DNA of 5,684 nucleotides from Amoeboaphelidium protococcarum X5 (taxonomy: Eukaryota; Fungi; Aphelidiomycota), in the NCBI GenBank assembly GCA_023515725.1, contig JALDTO010000001.1, positions 1-5,684 of the forward strand, in the 5' to 3' direction. The notes beneath the pieces were generated by a model. The model worked only from the letters and a program-made list of their open reading frames with translations. It had not been told where the DNA came from and searched no databases. The position numbers were made by a program, and so were the translations under genes. Shown here in pieces: positions 1 through 5,684 of the stretch. Position 1 is the first letter of the stretch, and each line of letters opens with the position of its first letter.

Positions 1-2528
1 CCACACTCATTTAAATGTTCAAGCACAACAAGAGGCACGAGATCTTTCGATTTGAGAATTATACATTACTAGTCGATGATTTCGACATGTACAGAGGACT
101 TTGTAAGATAGTTTTTAAGCTTGAACGCGCTAGGATAGAAGACATTTGAACTTATCACCTGTCCATGCACATTGAGGCACTTCATAAAGGACAGGTATGA
201 ACTTTAACGTGCATCAGCTAACAAACTCTCGGAGAAAATATCAGAGATGTCTCTGCTCTGCATGCTGGACAATTCCTCTAGTACCACAGCTTCTTCAGTT
301 GATAAAGCACTGTGTACAATGTTCCAGACTTGAATCTCAACCGTTACATTCTAGTACGACGTCAAGGATGAATTACAAATATGAACACGCAATTCACCAT
401 CTTTGCCAAAGTATGAACTTATCAACACATCTTGAAAAAATACTTTGGCATAATTGTGCAGAATTTTCCACTTACCATCCACTTACAAACTCGACCATGA
501 GGGTGCGTGCCAAACATCGTTCAACTGCCAGTAGAGAGCACCCATGCAGTACGGCATCAGTCTTCGATAATGCTCAGTCTGGGCCTTGACGCAGATAGCT
601 TGTGCCAGTTGTGTCATTATACAGTACTTTTCAAATTGTAACGGTGAACATGGTGCGCGTTCATCAATTAACCAGGGCATATCATCAGTATCAAAGTAAT
701 ATGATAGTTGTAAAGATATTTCAGGTTAGCCATTAGTATGATGATTCCGATGGACCATCCCCACAGAGAGCGGGTGCAAAGAGTCGGGAGAAGTCACAAG
801 TTTTAGAGATGAGAACCACGGCATGCTCTGGAAACCATACTCACTAGCGAATCTGCAGACTGGCATCTTATGTATGATGGTACCGTCATCTTTATAGTTA
901 TAATAATGAGTATCGCCATATTCGTGTGGATTCTAAACTTTAAAGCGTTCTCTGCCATCCGCGAGTATACCATTGGTAGGACTTGATGACACATACGGTC
1001 GATGATCCAGTTGGCGGACAATGGTTTGAATCACAGTATTATACAAATAATGATAATCGACGGCATATTTGCAAGGATTCGATACAACGTCTTTGAACCA
1101 CCCATTGCACATTGCCTCTTCATTCTCATTATTTCCACTCCATAAGACGATACATGCATGATGCTGTAGTGACAATATTTGCTGTACAATCTCCTTCTGA
1201 ACATTCAGAATGAATTGATCAGAGACTGGATACATGGCACAAGTGAACATGAACTCTTACCACACCATTATAGAATAATAATCACACAGCTTATAAAACA
1301 CATCGGGCAAATATCTACCACCGGCCCAGACGCGAATACAATTAATACCAACTGCTACAACATTCTAAATCAAATTCTTATACTAATCCTCCTAATCAAA
1401 ATGAAACGGTATTATATCAAGAGGCACCATATTCGACCCTTTACAGAATACCAAATTACCGTTTACAACTAGAGAGAAAGGTTATCCATCATCATTCTAG
1501 ATAGGACATTAATTCAACTCAATCTTGTTAAAAGAAAACGGCTTGATAAACTCTTAAACTTGCCCACTAGAGCCATTCAAGTAAACTTTTGCGCAGTATT
1601 AACCGGTGTTAAAAAGACGCCTTGTACCATGCTCAGGTAGTTGTAACCTTTAGAGATCAATATTACATCGATAAATGGTATCCTCTCCAATCTAGACCGC
1701 TTTAAATTTGTCAAAGCCAACAGTAAAATTAAACAAGCTGTCTGAAGGTTAATCGCACTTTTAGCCATTAGATTCCTACGAGATGTTTGAAGTAACTGAG
1801 CTTATTGTAGAAATGTGGAGACCAACCAAAGATAGCGTGATTCCAGGCGAAGGATCTAAATAAGAACATATTCCGCATTCAAAGACTTTGAACTCACGAG
1901 ACTTCAAACATAACAGCTTCACTTCTCCATAAATACCAACAGGGCATATCGAAGGACCCCAATCCCAACCAAAGGAACTCTAACATTTGCGTACAAGATT
2001 TCTCCGCAAAGATATCTAATCAACAGTGCGCAAAGCATCTGAATGGTCAGACGGAATAGGATAGTCTAACTCACATTACAGCTTACTCAGATGTTGTATG
2101 ATACTCGGAAAGTGAAGTTATAGTGATACTTAACGCGAGTCAACCAACTTACTGCCGATAACTGACCGTTTGAGTGAAACAACGTGCCGTGTGAACTCAT
2201 TGTCCACTCTCTGCACGTACTGACCATTTATGAAGACATCAGCCACTGTATCAATACCAGAAAGGACCAGGAAATATTCTTCATCTGATTAAGTACCGGC
2301 AACACTCATGTCTATCAAATCTATTGTACAAGAATACGTCCAGTCAGTCCTGACAAGCCAGTCGTAGCATTTCAAGTAGTTTTCGTCGCGGTACAAATCT
2401 TGTCGGGTAAATACGCCATGACTGATGATTATAGCATGAACGTCTGCTGGAAACTCTTTTATTGCATAATTTCTATCTCTTGAACTTAAGGTCCACTTAT
2501 ACTTACTACAATGGACTTCCAGGACCAT
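1..2528 (-). CDS. MANBA: Beta-mannosidase, glycoside hydrolase family 2 (MANBA-like); 3' end lies beyond the left edge; needs TAA/TAG=Gln
   Basis: One continuous minus-strand frame from ATG 2528-2526 to position 1 with no TGA. It joins track ORFs 2289..2537, 933..1250 and 483..680. GH2 beta-mannosidase motifs occur in the expected order: [22 protein letters not shown][Q=TAG][41 protein letters not shown][Q=TAA][18 protein letters not shown] (acid/base Glu 1127-1125), [26 protein letters not shown] (nucleophile Glu 842-840), [27 protein letters not shown]. The ATG has A at -3. In-frame upstream ATGs at 2633 and 2651 are possible alternative starts. Confidence 0.95.
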
Positions 2529-2881
2529 ATTCTGCAAAATTCTGAGTAGATGTTTAGTGTGAAGTGGGTTTTAAGTTGAAACAGAGAAATCTCGCCGATT
2601 CAAATTAGCATTGAAGTTATTACCTTTCCACATGCATTAAGTGACAATCATGCTTGTAATGTTGCATTAACTTGGGACTATCTACAGTTTTTTTTGCAAG
2701 TGATGAGGCCCGTGTGATTGGGCAGTTGTTGCGACTACATGATTGGTGAGTGCTATTTTGGTGCATGCATATCATCAGCAACGTGGCTGAAGAAAAGCCT
2801 TAATATATTATTAACTCTTACCCTTCAAATTACTTACTCAATTGGTCTTTATCACATTGAATAACTCTTACTCTTATCATA
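2529..2881. promoter_or_regulatory. Short divergent intergenic region, probable bidirectional promoter
   Basis: 353 bp between two head-to-head ATGs. Contains two TGATTGG (reverse CCAAT boxes) at 2715-2721 and 2740-2746, a T8 tract at 2688-2695, the AT-only palindrome TAATATATTA at 2801-2810, and TAACTCTTAC twice (2812-2821, 2862-2871). Confidence 0.55.
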
Positions 2882-2950
2882 ATGTTGTATCGCGTGTTTT
2901 TGGCTCTGGTCACGGCATTCCTATCAACTATTATCGTGTCTGTCGGTGCC
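2882..2950 (+). other. Predicted N-terminal signal peptide of the receptor kinase
   Basis: Short basic n-region (MLYR), hydrophobic core (VFLALVTAFLSTIIV) and a small-residue cleavage motif V-G-A|L. Confidence 0.8.
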
Positions 2951-5684
2951 CTGTCGTACGCGGTGCCTCAAGCGTAGTATTTCCAGTTGGGTAGCACTTA
3001 AAGTGACATTGGTTAATTTGCTTTTGATTCTAATAATGATTTAGTGGTTGCGTTACAAAGTGGGGCTTCTATTACGGCTCCTTTGCGTTACAAGCCGTTT
3101 AATAGCTCTATTTTTAACACTATAGCATTTTCCAATAAGACAAATTCTTGGGGTCTGGTAGTGGCTCGCTTCACCGGTGCTGATGGATGGTTCAAGTCAT
3201 CTTTTGCTGTCTCTTGTATCATCACTACTGGATGCAATGTGTTTTACAGTAGCTTCGTTGTGAATGCAGATGACTCTGTGATGCTGTCTGGTTAGTTCAG
3301 AGCTCAGCCTATCATGTTGTTTGATAGTAAGAGAAATGGAGTCGCTGTCCTCAATCCGCAGTATAATAACGTCAGTTGTGCTGTCGCTGCGCACTTTGAT
3401 GCCAATGGTGCATATGTATGGTCAATGTAGGTATGTGGTTTTTACGGAGCGTCTGTTACTTTTGTAGGTGTTGATGCATATGGCAATCGTATAATTGGTG
3501 GTAATTCGTTATCTTCCATGCTCTACTTCACTGATGACAAAAATGCATTGGTGTTTTAATTTCCCCTGAAGCTGGTAGCTGGTGCCAATCAATAGGATAG
3601 CTTCATACTGTCTCTATCGCCTGTCGATAACTCTATCTAGTGGTCTATCATTGGCCATAACAACGCCTGTACCCAGAGTAACTTGGCTGGTGCTTTCACG
3701 CCTTCACGCGACAAGTTGAATATTCGCGGCACTTTCTGTGGACCAGCATATTTTTATGATAAGGATAACAACGTATTGGCTCAAACTGGGTACACTGGTG
3801 GTTGGGATTAGTATGTCATTAATCTGTCTACTTAAACTGGTTCATTTAATTGGATAATTACGCAGGGTGGTCCTCAGTCTGAATTTGGGTACACTATCTC
3901 GGTGGACGAGAATGAGAATGTCTATGTAGGTGGAAACTCTGCATCCCATCCTCACAGACTAATTGATTCTACGGGGACTCAATCCTTTATCAGCTATGGC
4001 ATTGGACTCTATGCGGGGTTCCAGGTCAAGTTGGATAAGTTTGGCAAATTGTCTTAATACGCTTCTTGGAATGGATCAAGCTATTCCGGAAATCAAGGCT
4101 TTTATGTTGGTGGTGTGAGCGACAGCTTTGGAAATTTCTACGTATATGGATAGTAAGTAGGCTCAGTAAATCTCTATGATAAGAAGCTTCGCCTGGTATC
4201 CTCTTATAACCTGACCACCTCGTCTAGTGCTCTCTTCGCAATGTTCGATGCGGATGGTTATAGTCAGTGGTTCACTGAATTGTAAGGAGCCACCTCTTCG
4301 AGAAGCATGTTTTAGAAAAATATGACAGTATATTTGGGTGTTGGCTTTACTACCACCATGCGTGTGCTGGACTCGAGTCGTAATTAATAATTACAAGCCA
4401 CTTCAAATGGCGGCGAAGATTTTGCTCTCGTAAAGTATGATGTTGTTTATGAGCCTGATAGCACCGCTACGGTGGTGCTGACTGCAAATAGTGCTACCCC
4501 TACCACTTCGCTTACCACTCAGACTGTAGTTGGCACAGGCACCAACTAAGCTGCCACGAGTATGGACACTACTCACTCTGCTTTAAGTACATCCACACTC
4601 TCTTCTACTATTTTGGAGACTGTTTCCTCATCTTCTTCATCATCAGCTGCCTATGAGGACAACTTTGGTCAGCCAAACTTTTTTGGGGATTACTTCTAGT
4701 CATTCTCGTTTCCTCCTGCGTAAACTGTTGAATTTGTGCCATTCATTTTTAAACTGCAGGGATAGTTTAGTAGCGGTAAGATGACAACAACGAGTTTCAC
4801 TTCAAGTAATCGTGGTGTTGGCGATATAGCTGCAAACTCTGATGGTAACATTTCTCGCTTGTTCCCAGTGCTGATAACAGTAGCTGCTTGCGTAATTATC
4901 GTAATTTCGCTGATTTTCGGTGTCTGGATCTATCGTATGAGACGTGCGAAATGGTTGACTGCCGTTAAACGCGTAACTGAGTAGCGTGAGCAGCATGAGA
5001 CGCAGATGCAACTACAGACTGTCCTCAATTTCTCTTCGATGGCCAACAACACCACTTTGCTCAACCAGAGCGATGTCATTAGTGTGCCTGCATTTTTGGA
5101 ACTGACTGCGGGTTTGCACTTCCGTGCTAATGAAAAGAACCCACTGGCTGCAGGTGGATAGGGAAAGATCTGTAAGGCTGAAGTGCTCAAATTTCCAGCA
5201 TCCCATCTGTACAAGGGAACTTCCGTGCCTGTCTGTGTTGCAAAGTATTACGAAAAGAATTCCAAGCCTGAAGCGTTTCTGTAAGAGGTTGCGCTTTTAT
5301 GGTATTTCCGTGAGGAGCGCTCTATTGCCAGGATTATTGGATTCGATAGTGCCAACAAGATTTTATTGATGCCATTTTATGAGATGGGTTCGTTGAATGG
5401 CCTGATATCTGATGCAATGGAAGGTGATGCATCTAAGCTGACATTCTGGAGTATGAATTTTGTTATCAATGCTGGCCTGGATATTTTCAGAGGGCTGACC
5501 GCTTTACATGCTGCTGGTATTATTCATAATGATGTCAAGAGTGCAAACTATCTACTCCAAGTTGTCAATCAGCAGATTGTAGTCTGCTTAACGGATTTTG
5601 GTATTTGTACGCTGATGGCTTAATCTAACAAAGTGACGGGCATTGAGTGGAATAGTCTTAAAGGTGTGACTGTGCACTATGCTG
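2882..5684 (+). CDS. Receptor-like protein kinase (signal peptide, beta-propeller ectodomain, S/T-rich stalk, TM helix, Ser/Thr TKL-like kinase); 3' end lies beyond the right edge; needs TAA/TAG=Gln
   Basis: ATG 2882 is the first ATG after an in-frame TGA at 2858-2860 and has A at -3. The frame then stays free of TGA to the window end and joins track ORFs 3044..3295, 4781..4984 and 5366..5623, all in the same frame. N-terminus MLYRVFLALVTAFLSTIIVSVGA; TM segment VLITVAACVIIVISLIFGVWIY followed by RMRRAK; kinase motifs LAAGG[Q]GKI, CVAK, FL[Q]EV, IIHNDVKSANYL, LTDFGI, GVTVHYA. Confidence 0.93.
3017..4441 (+). repeat. Seven degenerate SBBP-like beta-propeller repeats (about 64-79 aa each) forming the ectodomain
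   Basis: Recurrent h-h-D-x-x-[GND]-N-h-h-h-x-G cores: FAFDSNNDLVVA (~3026), FVVNADDSVMLSG (~3263), VGVDAYGNRIIGG (~3473), AFTPSRDKLNIRG (~3698), ISVDENENVYVGG (~3905), GVSDSFGNFYVYG (~4121), MFQKNMTVYLG (~4313). Most are followed by an h-h-x-h-D-x-x-G-x-x-x-W type strand, e.g. AHFDANGAYVW, VINLSTQTGSFNW, AMFDADGYSQW, GGEDFALVKYD. Confidence 0.75.
4460..4651 (+). other. Ser/Thr-rich, mucin-like extracellular stalk (probably O-glycosylated)
   Basis: Translates as STATVVLTANSATPTTSLTTQTVVGTGTNQAATSMDTTHSALSTSTLSSTILETVSSSSSSSAA. Confidence 0.75.
4868..4933 (+). other. Transmembrane helix, type I topology
   Basis: 22 uncharged, mostly hydrophobic residues VLITVAACVIIVISLIFGVWIY, immediately followed by the basic cluster RMRRAK (positive-inside rule). 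Confidence 0.9.
5120..5684 (+). other. Protein kinase catalytic domain, subdomains I-VIII (truncated by window end)
   Basis: Gly-rich loop AAGGQGKI (TAG at 5159-5161), Lys in CVAK, alphaC Glu in FLQEV (TAA at 5282-5284), hinge LLMPFYEMGSL, catalytic loop HNDVKSAN (5525-5548), DFG (5594-5602), start of the P+1/APE segment GVTVHYA. Confidence 0.93.

What the first reader, a model, noticed from the sequence alone, without database searches (positions are those of the whole stretch)
2882..5684. Hidden receptor kinase with an unusual architecture: seven-bladed propeller, mucin-like stalk, TM helix, kinase
Seen: complete type I membrane receptor layout in one frame of >=934 aa. Established: single-pass receptor kinases are typical of animals and other holozoans (RTKs), plants (RLK/Pelle with LRR, LysM or lectin ectodomains), oomycetes and amoebae, and are essentially absent from dikaryan fungi. 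An SBBP-type propeller is not one of the classical ectodomains. Inference: an independently assembled, lineage-specific receptor family that senses an extracellular ligand, such as a host or prey surface or a glycan. This is the best candidate for an undescribed system in the window.
Basis: partly seen in the sequence, partly recalled or inferred. Interest (0 to 1): 0.8.

Follow-up and report, generated by a model that had tools for sequence, protein, structure and literature searches.

The report
Aphelid receptor kinase with SBBP propeller
This gene of the algal parasite Amoeboaphelidium protococcarum, a close relative of fungi, encodes a cell-surface receptor with a bacterial-style seven-bladed propeller outside, a sugar-coated stalk, one membrane helix and a protein kinase inside; it is one member of a large receptor-kinase family already reported as expanded in aphelids, and its ligand is unknown.

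Summary
Window 2882-5684 (+) is one intronless frame of 934 codons. It has 25 in-frame TAA/TAG codons read as Gln and no TGA, and it is cut by the contig end.

- **Layout:** signal peptide, seven-bladed SBBP beta-propeller, Ser/Thr-rich stalk, one TM helix, then a kinase with all catalytic residues and an HND (non-RD) catalytic loop.
- **Organism:** Amoeboaphelidium protococcarum, not a ciliate. GenBank already holds a 90% identical, syntenic, full-length (1038 aa) copy, KAI3650024.1, named "hypothetical protein".
- **Propeller:** an AlphaFold model built with 39 bacterial SBBP rows gave pLDDT 75 and pTM 0.80. It matches the CylK propeller (Z 32.8) and bacterial SBBP surface proteins (TM about 0.8).
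- **Kinase:** nearest solved kinases are RIPK2, Pto, CTR1 and RIPK1, so it looks TKL-like.
- **Selection:** dN/dS is about 0.10 in both propeller and kinase.
- **Family:** at least 112 kinase matches in this 23.6-Mb genome. Of 26 complete paralogues examined, 22 have the same propeller-TM-kinase layout, often in tandem arrays.

"Undescribed" is only partly right. An expansion of receptor-like kinases in aphelids was published in 2022, and this scan has already noted the same family on other pieces of this genome. I could not check whether that paper names the SBBP ectodomain. Ligand and function remain inferred.

The parts
2882..2962 (+). Signal peptide, aa 1-27. Predicted cleavage after SYA.
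   Evidence: Hydropathy peak at aa 1-28. The N-terminus matches that of GenBank KAI3650024.1 at all but residue 12. No SignalP run was possible.
2999..4453 (+). Seven-bladed SBBP beta-propeller ectodomain, aa 40-524. Blades in nt: 2999-3235, 3236-3433, 3434-3655, 3656-3862, 3863-4066, 4067-4282, 4283-4453.
   Evidence: Blade alignment and leave-one-out HMM scores. In-register alignment A1 with 39 bacterial SBBP propellers. A bacterial-only profile hits at E 3.4e-22. Pfam SBBP hits blade 5. AF2 model pLDDT 75, pTM 0.80. CylK match Z 32.8, rmsd 3.1 A, 391 residues aligned. Atlas SBBP clusters at TM 0.75-0.81.
4454..4858 (+). Ser/Thr-rich, mucin-like stalk, aa 525-659. The core at aa 521-600 is 40-53% S+T. 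This is the most variable part of the protein.
   Evidence: Composition. 69% identity to the counterpart, against 91% in the propeller and 96% in TM plus cytoplasmic part. dN/dS 0.27. Public-run contigs replace 180 nt (4460-4639) with 174 other letters.
4859..4933 (+). Single transmembrane helix, aa 660-684, followed by the basic stretch RMRRAK on the cytoplasmic side.
   Evidence: The only internal hydropathy peak, up to 3.06. All 26 complete paralogues have a hydrophobic segment about 80-105 aa before the kinase.
4934..5122 (+). Juxtamembrane region, aa 685-747.
   Evidence: No amino-acid change against the counterpart across aa 656-747.
5123..5684 (+). Protein kinase domain, N-lobe and start of C-lobe, aa 748-934, cut by the contig end. 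Motifs: Gly loop GGQGK 758-762, Lys788, Glu802, HND 882-884 (nt 5525-5533), Asn889, DFG 905-907 (nt 5594-5602).
   Evidence: Pfam Pkinase 9.5e-13 and PK_Tyr_Ser-Thr 2.2e-11. The full domain is present in P0003 at 751-1027. Motifs are conserved across 36 family members. Best PDB matches are RIPK2, Pto, CTR1 and RIPK1. A loose end of run contigs continues the frame into AAPE.
2529..2881 (.). 353-bp divergent intergenic region, 36% GC, between the two genes.
   Evidence: The GenBank locus also has a 353-bp spacer. Run contigs X4 and X5 have no cover at 2730-2839.
3..2528 (-). Neighbouring GH2 beta-mannosidase gene, 842 codons, cut by the contig start. It is context only, not part of the receptor.
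   Evidence: Table-6 ORF. The syntenic neighbour in GenBank is an 892-aa protein with Glyco_hydro_2_N2 and Mannosidase_ig.

Best explanation
The gene encodes a type I single-pass receptor-like Ser/Thr kinase of Amoeboaphelidium protococcarum.

**Shown**
- One uninterrupted reading frame.
- A cleavable-looking signal peptide.
- A seven-bladed SBBP beta-propeller of the kind found on bacterial cell surfaces.
- A Ser/Thr-rich stalk, presumably O-glycosylated.
- One TM helix with a basic cytoplasmic flank.
- A kinase with every catalytic residue and a non-RD (HND) catalytic loop of the TKL-like D-x-K-S-x-N type.
- Purifying selection on both propeller and kinase.
- Membership of a family of dozens of similarly built, often tandemly arrayed paralogues.

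**Inferred**
- The propeller binds an extracellular ligand. The likeliest is a glycan or surface component of the algal host or of the environment.
- Binding clusters or re-orients receptors so that the kinase domains phosphorylate each other or a substrate, as in plant RLKs and in animal receptor Ser/Thr and Tyr kinases.
- This feeds host finding, attachment or invasion decisions of the zoospore or amoeboid stage.
For: - **Frame and code:**
- **Identity and synteny:** matches KAI3650024.1 of A. protococcarum, with the same GH2 neighbour.
- **Signal, stalk and TM:**
- **Propeller:**
- **Kinase:** Pfam above cut-off. Best PDB relatives are RIPK2 at 1.1e-15, then Pto, CTR1 and RIPK1. K, E, HxD, N, DFG, APE and the subdomain XI Arg are conserved in 34-36 of 36 family kinases, and 34 of 36 read HND.
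- **Selection:** dN/dS is 0.10 in the propeller, 0.10 in the kinase and 0.27 in the stalk.
- **Family size and layout:** 112 kinase matches in the genome. 22 of 26 complete paralogue ORFs hit a bacterial-only propeller profile at E 1e-12 to 1e-40, and all 26 have a TM segment before the kinase. Apart from the window's own blade, 8 of the other 9 Pfam-level SBBP hits in the genome lie 1.8-2.3 kb upstream of a kinase match on the same strand. The ninth lies at a contig start.
- **One piece in other samples:** a 1948-nt contig of public run X4 runs from blade 4 through stalk, TM and kinase and past the window end. Two 100% identical contigs occur in a freshwater metatranscriptome.
Against: - There is no experimental evidence for ligand, topology, glycosylation or kinase activity.
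- Signal peptide and TM rest on hydropathy only.
- On the whole protein the Pfam SBBP score (19.1) is below the cut-off (20.5). Blades 1 and 7 are not significant by the leave-one-out test.
- The TKL-like label rests on PDB ranking and motifs, not on a phylogeny.
- The kind of runs X3-X5 is not on record, so the bridging contig does not prove a single transcript.
- In this assembly the gene lacks its last 104 or so codons.
Confidence: 0.8

Rival explanations
1. The protein is a surface adhesin or anchor. The propeller and mucin-like stalk mainly attach the parasite to the algal wall, and the kinase has only a minor or constitutive role rather than ligand-gated signalling.
For: The nearest structural relatives of the propeller are bacterial secreted or cell-surface proteins with T9SS tails, PKD and CHU_C domains. 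A long, variable mucin-like stalk is typical of adhesins.
Against: The kinase and juxtamembrane parts are the most conserved parts of the protein, at 96% identity, with no amino-acid change in aa 656-747 and dN/dS 0.10 in the kinase. All catalytic residues are kept across the family. This argues that signalling is the selected function.
Confidence: 0.1
2. The propeller is catalytic, like the CylK Friedel-Crafts alkylating enzyme, and not a binding sensor. The protein would then be an ecto-enzyme tethered to a kinase.
For: CylK is the best solved structural and sequence match, with profile E 7.7e-67 for alignment A1 and Z 32.8.
Against: Identity to CylK is only 17-18%. The A1 profile score is driven by the bacterial rows. 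CylK also needs its N-terminal domain, which is absent here, since the match covers only CylK residues 250-654. Most SBBP proteins are non-enzymatic surface proteins. CylK active-site residues were not compared.
Confidence: 0.03
3. The gene is decaying or an assembly artefact. On this reading the 5.7-kb contig is a stray haplotig, and the frame is open only because TAA/TAG are read through.
For: The contig is short and both ends fall inside genes. Some family members are broken: an in-frame TGA in L061 and split ORFs in L055 and L062.
Against: There are 934 codons without TGA, whereas the other five frames hold 25-56 TGA. dN/dS is 0.14 against a syntenic full-length GenBank gene. TAA/TAG align with CAA/CAG. 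Contigs at 99% identity or more occur in runs of two further studies. UAR=Gln is documented for this species (PMC5304391, PMC6299283).
Confidence: 0.03
4. There are two adjacent genes, a secreted propeller protein and a membrane kinase, that were read as one.
For: None, beyond the general caution that an ORF is not a transcript.
Against: The frame has no stop between the parts. GenBank models a single 3117-nt exon. The same order recurs in 22 of 26 paralogues. A single run contig bridges propeller and kinase.
Confidence: 0.02

Closest known systems
Aphelid receptor-like protein kinase expansion (Mikhailov et al. 2022, Curr Biol 32:4607; cited in PMC10608142)
   Same: Same organism group. The layout is ectodomain, single TM and kinase, in many copies. 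The window's counterpart KAI3650024.1 comes from an A. protococcarum assembly.
   Different: I could not read that paper, so I do not know whether it names the SBBP propeller, the non-RD loop or this subfamily. In the kinase tree the window gene, with MP228_005656 and MP228_005661, forms a small long-branched subfamily apart from the tandem arrays.
Plant RLK/Pelle and animal IRAK/RIPK kinases (TKL group), especially non-RD pattern-recognition receptors such as Xa21, FLS2 and EFR (own knowledge; Dardick and Ronald 2006)
   Same: Type I single-pass receptor with a repeat ectodomain. TKL-like catalytic loop (D-V-K-S-A-N). Non-RD. Large lineage-specific tandem expansions. The best PDB kinase matches are RIPK2, Pto, CTR1, RIPK1, SOBIR1, BRI1 and IRAK4.
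   Different: The ectodomain is an SBBP propeller, not LRR, LysM or lectin. The best PDB kinase match is weak (60.9 bits). Common descent with RLK/Pelle was not tested. No death domain.
MET/RON and plexin-type receptors with a Sema domain; ROS1/Sevenless with YWTD propellers (own knowledge)
   Same: A beta-propeller (seven-bladed in Sema) held on a stalk above one TM helix and a cytoplasmic kinase.
   Different: The Sema and YWTD propellers are unrelated in sequence to SBBP. Those kinases are tyrosine kinases of animals. Here the catalytic loop is of the Ser/Thr/TKL type.
Mycobacterium tuberculosis PknD (PDB 1rwi)
   Same: A beta-propeller sensor joined through one TM helix to a Ser/Thr kinase. 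The sensor matches the A1 profile weakly, at E 6.3e-4.
   Different: Six-bladed NHL propeller. The kinase is N-terminal and the sensor C-terminal, the reverse order. It is a bacterial Hanks-type kinase.
Bacterial and archaeal SBBP (PF06739) surface proteins, and the CylK propeller
   Same: Seven blades with a period of about 65 aa, aligned in register. TM 0.75-0.81 and Z 32.8.
   Different: About 20% identity. None of the 150 best SBBP proteins other than the aphelid counterpart carries a kinase. Those proteins are secreted or wall-anchored and are not signalling receptors.
Bacteroides hybrid two-component sensors (BT4663, BT4673) with periplasmic propellers
   Same: Propeller sensors that bind glycans and drive a cytoplasmic kinase. 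They appear low in the Foldseek list.
   Different: Reg_prop double propellers, a histidine kinase, bacterial. This is an analogy only.

Membership tests
Eukaryotic protein kinase superfamily (Pfam PF00069 / PF07714) | Profile match above the curated cut-off | tested here: met
   Window protein: Pkinase 48.6 bits (cut-off 31.7) and PK_Tyr_Ser-Thr 44 bits (cut-off 23.1). Full-length counterpart: 78 and 77 bits, covering profile positions 5-260.
Eukaryotic protein kinase superfamily (Pfam PF00069 / PF07714) | Catalytic residues: Gly loop, VAIK Lys, alphaC Glu, HxD Asp, Asn, DFG, APE | tested here: met
   GGQGK, K788, E802, H-N-D884, N889 and DFG905-907 are in the window. APE and the subdomain XI Arg are present in P0003 and in the run contig that passes the window end.
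TKL group of protein kinases | Groups with TKL kinases (RIPK, IRAK/Pelle, Raf/CTR1, STKR) rather than TK, STE, AGC and other groups | tested here: inconclusive
   The PDB ranking is led by RIPK2, Pto, CTR1 and RIPK1, but PAK4 (STE group) scores the same as RIPK1. The two Pfam kinase models score about equally. The catalytic loop reads H-N-D-V-K-S-A-N. No phylogeny with reference kinomes could be run.
RLK/Pelle-IRAK family | Monophyly of the kinase domain with plant RLKs, Pelle and IRAK | not tested
   Pto, SOBIR1, BRI1 and IRAK4 are hit only at E 2e-10 to 3e-6. No tree was made, so I do not file it here.
Receptor tyrosine kinases | Tyrosine-kinase catalytic loop (HRDLAARN / HRDLRAAN type) | tested here: not met
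   The loop reads HNDVKSAN, and HND[IV]K[SA]xN in 34 of 36 family members.
SBBP beta-propeller (PF06739) | Pfam repeat match above the cut-off | tested here: inconclusive
   25.3 bits against a 20.5 cut-off on piece 3836-4054, but 19.1 bits on the whole protein. Only blade 5 is seen by Pfam.
SBBP beta-propeller (PF06739) | Seven repeats with a period of about 65 aa, homologous to bona fide SBBP propellers, and a propeller fold | tested here: met
   phmmer of one blade finds 2649 proteins at E<=0.001, and every non-aphelid one that was scanned with Pfam is SBBP-rich. In-register alignment A1. Bacterial-only profile E 3.4e-22. Model pTM 0.80, TM 0.81 to SBBP clusters, Z 32.8 to CylK and Z about 27 to seven-bladed G-beta and RACK1.
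Type I single-pass membrane receptor | N-terminal signal peptide, one TM helix, positive-inside flank, C-terminal cytoplasmic domain | tested here: met
   Two hydropathy peaks only, with RMRRAK after the second. This rests on hydropathy and sequence inspection. SignalP and DeepTMHMM were not available.
Aphelid RLK expansion (Mikhailov et al. 2022) | Ectodomain, TM and kinase proteins in many copies in aphelid genomes | tested here: met
   Organism by KAI3650024.1. 112 kinase matches. All 26 complete paralogues have a TM before the kinase, and 22 of them have a propeller. The paper's own criteria could not be read.

The most novel reading that the evidence does not exclude
SBBP-propeller receptor kinases may be a separately assembled class of eukaryotic surface receptors, so far found only in aphelids. 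On this reading a bacterial-type surface propeller, possibly acquired by horizontal transfer, was fused to a non-RD TKL-like kinase. The fusion then expanded into dozens of rapidly diversifying paralogues that read algal host surfaces. That would parallel plant and animal innate-immune receptor kinases in the sister lineage of Fungi. If so, the ectodomain architecture and its role have not been described.
Probability: 0.3. Interest if true: 0.7.

Novelty: new member of a known kind. Interest (0 to 1): 0.45.

Why it matters
Fungi proper largely lack single-pass receptor kinases. Their sister lineage, the aphelids, has many, and this gene shows concretely what one looks like.

- **Evolution:** it bears on how the phagotrophic, host-hunting ancestor of fungi sensed its surroundings, and on what was lost when fungi became osmotrophs.
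- **Applied interest:** A. protococcarum crashes algal production ponds, so the receptors that may guide host recognition are candidate handles for studying host range.
- **Testability:** the propeller is small, foldable and expressible, which makes ligand hunting by glycan arrays or algal wall fractions directly feasible.
- **Limit:** the gain here is annotation of a known expansion, not a new kind of system.

Tried and rejected
- **Taxon.** I first took the TAA/TAG=Gln code to mean a ciliate or diplomonad. The hit to KAI3650024.1 of A. protococcarum with conserved synteny ruled that out.
- **Bacterial contamination.** The bacterial-type propeller raised this possibility. It is rejected because the propeller sits in the same frame as a eukaryotic kinase, uses the variant code and has a syntenic eukaryotic neighbour.
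- **Stop-free pieces by reference.** Only one SBBP hit and one kinase hit came out. Paralogue pieces gave nothing useful in Pfam.
- **BLAST self-comparison.** It showed no repeats in the ectodomain. The repeats appeared only by manual blade definition, MAFFT and HMMs.
- **Single-sequence AlphaFold.** It failed with pLDDT 34.5. The alignment-based run worked.
- **Word-index searches.**
  - Whole protein, kinase region and kinase alone found only A. protococcarum copies plus three marginal bacterial-looking proteins.
  - These searches missed even the in-genome paralogues, so the blank says little about other taxa.
- **Atlas feature search.**
  - For the ectodomain the result was weak, at 0.81.
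  - For the whole protein it gave one lead, a 1065-aa kinase cluster commonest in diatoms in which 17% of members carry a Rax2 domain. I could not follow this up.
- **Genome fetch.** The family survey therefore covers 28 loci only.
- **Literature.** Mikhailov et al. 2022 is not held. Open papers on aphelid transcriptomes say nothing about these receptors.
  - Read laying was given 3285 letters.
  - No protein was sent read through a stop by reference. The full-length searches used the database's own entries P0152 and P0003.
Full report
**1. What the window is**

The 5684-bp window is a whole contig (G000:C1) of a 23.6-Mb, 346-contig assembly.
- On the + strand, 2882-5683 is a frame of 934 codons with 13 TAA, 12 TAG and no TGA. 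The other five frames hold 25-56 TGA each.
- TGA at 2858-2860 closes the frame upstream, and 2882 is the first ATG.
- Reading TAA/TAG as Gln gives a protein identical to database entry P0152, the collection's own record for this contig.
- A blade-sized, stop-free piece (3836-4054) searched against 1.8 billion representatives found P0003 (86% identity over the piece; 90% over the full length). This is KAI3650024.1, [quoted passage not shown], 1038 aa.
- In GenBank assembly GCA_023515745.1 that gene is a single 3117-nt exon. It has the same divergently transcribed GH2 beta-mannosidase neighbour and the same 353-bp spacer as the window.
- The organism is therefore this aphelid or a very close strain. 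Its UAR=Gln code is documented (PMC5304391; PMC6299283).
- Of the window's 25 TAA/TAG codons, 14 stay TAA/TAG and 8 are CAA/CAG in the counterpart, whose gene ends in TGA.

**2. Anatomy**

*Membrane layout.* Hydropathy shows two peaks only.
- The first is aa 1-28, a signal peptide with likely cleavage after SYA27.
- The second is aa 655-687, followed by RMRRAK. This is the type I arrangement.
- Between them, aa 521-600 is 40-53% Ser+Thr.

*Repeats in the ectodomain.* aa 40-524 divides into seven units of 57-79 aa.
- They share the pattern "D-x-x-G-N-x-Y-V-x-G ... D-x-F-V-x-K ... G-x-x-x-W".
- Leave-one-out HMMs score blades 2-6 above all 200 shuffles. Blades 1 and 7 do not stand out.
- The one-blade phmmer search found 2649 proteins at E<=0.001. 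The best are multi-blade proteins, and every non-aphelid one that I scanned with Pfam carries many SBBP (PF06739) repeats.
- Many of them have exactly seven repeats with a 65-aa period.
- Thirty-nine such seven-blade segments align with the window's ectodomain blade for blade (alignment A1).
- A profile built from the bacterial rows alone hits the window protein at E 3.4e-22.

*Fold.*
- AlphaFold2 without an alignment failed, with pLDDT 34.5.
- With A1 it gave pLDDT 75 and pTM 0.80, all beta.
- Foldseek against the PDB puts the CylK propeller first, and every other row listed is a beta-propeller or repeat beta-protein.
- VIA-align gives Z 32.8, rmsd 3.1 A and 391 aligned residues to CylK residues 250-654. 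It gives Z about 27 to the seven-bladed G-beta, RACK1 and Cdc20.
- ESM Atlas clusters of bacterial SBBP surface proteins match at TM 0.75-0.81 over 426-472 residues.

**3. The kinase**

- Pfam Pkinase and PK_Tyr_Ser-Thr both pass their cut-offs. In the full-length counterpart they cover the whole domain.
- The window holds the Gly loop (GGQGK), Lys788, Glu802, HND882-884, Asn889 and DFG905-907. The contig ends 27 residues after DFG.
- A loose end of public-run contigs continues the frame into A-A-P-E. P0003 supplies APE and the subdomain XI Arg.
- Across 36 family kinase domains these residues are conserved in 34-36 of 36. The catalytic loop reads HND[IV]K[SA]xN in 34 of 36, so this is a family-wide non-RD kinase.
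- The best solved relatives are RIPK2 (1.1e-15), Pto, CTR1 and RIPK1, followed by PAK4, SOBIR1, ActRIIA, BRI1, B-Raf and IRAK4.
- I read this as TKL-like but not proven, because no reference phylogeny could be run.

**4. Is it functional and one gene?**

- Against the GenBank counterpart, dN/dS is 0.10 in the propeller, 0.27 in the stalk, 0 (no replacement) in TM plus juxtamembrane, and 0.10 in the kinase.
- Public runs X3-X5 (one study; kind not on record) hold contigs at 99% identity or more over nearly the whole gene.
- In X4 and X5 the intergenic stretch 2730-2839 has no cover. Contig depths also differ about ten-fold between the two neighbouring genes. This looks like RNA but is not proof.
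- One X4 contig of 1948 nt runs from blade 4 (3777) through a variant stalk, the TM helix and the kinase, and 46 nt past the window end.
- A freshwater metatranscriptome (X1) has two contigs identical to 2993-3360.
- Nothing supports the refuting scenario of separate ectodomain and kinase transcripts.

**5. The family**

- The 112-aa kinase piece has 112 matches in this genome, a lower bound. Many sit in tandem arrays 3.3-3.6 kb apart on C98, C142, C233 and C213.
- They hold 26 distinct complete table-6 ORFs of 947-1234 aa. Each has a hydrophobic segment about 80-105 aa before the kinase.
- Of these, 22 hit the bacterial-only propeller profile at E 1e-12 to 1e-40, often over nearly its whole length.
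- Genome-wide, Pfam SBBP reaches its cut-off at ten places. One is the window's own blade 5. Eight of the other nine lie 1.8-2.3 kb upstream of a kinase match on the same strand. The ninth lies at a contig start.
- In this genome, SBBP therefore occurs essentially only as the ectodomain of receptor kinases.
- In a kinase tree the window gene, P0003 and its neighbour paralogue P0151 (MP228_005661, 80% identical) form a small long-branched subfamily, apart from at least four others.
- The window's ectodomain has no second copy in G000.

**6. How it probably works**

- Shown: the architecture, the intact catalytic residues, purifying selection and the family context.
- Inferred: the propeller, raised on a glycosylated stalk, binds an extracellular ligand. 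Binding brings kinase domains together for trans-phosphorylation, and the signal feeds host finding or invasion.
- The analogy is to plant non-RD RLKs, to MET (Sema propeller), to PknD and to Bacteroides propeller sensors that bind glycans. None of these is a demonstrated relative.
- The ligand is unknown. A glycan or algal wall component is a reasonable guess, not a result.

**7. Novelty**

- The gene is already in GenBank without a functional name.
- PMC10608142 credits Mikhailov et al. 2022 with showing that aphelids and fungi differ in their receptor-like protein kinases.
- From memory, that paper's abstract reports a conspicuous expansion of such kinases. I could not read it.
- I found no open paper linking aphelids, SBBP or propellers to kinases.
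- This scan has already reported the same family on other pieces of this genome (s1-570544, s1-555405 and others).
- I therefore file the window gene as a new member of a known kind. The SBBP ectodomain and non-RD loop may be new annotation of that kind.

**8. Limits**

- There is no kinase phylogeny and no SignalP or TMHMM run.
- Other aphelid genomes could not be reached.
- The word searches are too insensitive to show absence elsewhere.
- The run kinds are unknown.
- The gene is truncated in this contig.

Noticed in passing
window 3-2528 (-): A GH2 beta-mannosidase gene of 842 codons with many in-frame TAA/TAG, cut by the contig start. It is divergently transcribed from the receptor gene across a 353-bp spacer, and the same arrangement occurs in GenBank contig JALECJ010000056.1.
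   Followed up: partly
window 2882-5683 versus L042:6001-9117: Divergence from the GenBank counterpart is mosaic. There is a single difference (one replacement) in codons 1-118. dS is 0.13 in blade 2 and about 0.5 in blades 3-4. It rises to 0.9-1.8 in blades 5-7 and the stalk, then falls to 0.13-0.27 in TM and kinase. Parts of the protein (aa 150-300 and the kinase) are nearly as close to paralogue MP228_005661. This suggests recombination or gene conversion, or a hybrid genome.
   Followed up: partly
window 4460-4639: The stalk is hypervariable. Contigs of public runs X3-X5 replace these 180 nt with 174 other letters. Protein identity to the counterpart falls to 46% at aa 550-599.
   Followed up: partly
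L061:1624-4590, L062:2370-4434, L055:541-3114: Three family members look broken. L061 has a single in-frame TGA between propeller and kinase. L062 has overlapping ORFs that imply a frameshift. L055 has separated propeller and kinase ORFs. These may be pseudogenes, introns or errors.
   Followed up: no
G000 C98/C142, C146/C207 (L034/L035, L043/L044, L045/L046, L037/L038, L040/L041): Receptor-kinase arrays occur as near-identical pairs on different large contigs, with kinase branch lengths of 0-0.05. This fits duplicated or homeologous genome blocks. The window's own gene has no such partner in G000, although the GenBank assembly has two linked copies (MP228_005656 and MP228_005661).
   Followed up: partly
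L052, L053, L056, L057: Four full-length family members have a TM helix and a kinase, but their ectodomains do not hit the SBBP propeller profile. They may have a different or very divergent ectodomain.
   Followed up: no
P0003 (Atlas feature search): The nearest ESM Atlas cluster is a 1065-aa eukaryotic kinase family commonest in diatoms, in which 17% of members carry a Rax2 domain. A Kelch-kinase cluster from ciliates also appears. These are leads that propeller-type receptor kinases may exist in other protists.
   Followed up: no
window 2993-3360: Two contigs of a 2024 freshwater metatranscriptome (run X1) are 100% identical to this stretch. This strain, or a very close one, is therefore present and possibly expressing the gene in a natural water sample.
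   Followed up: no
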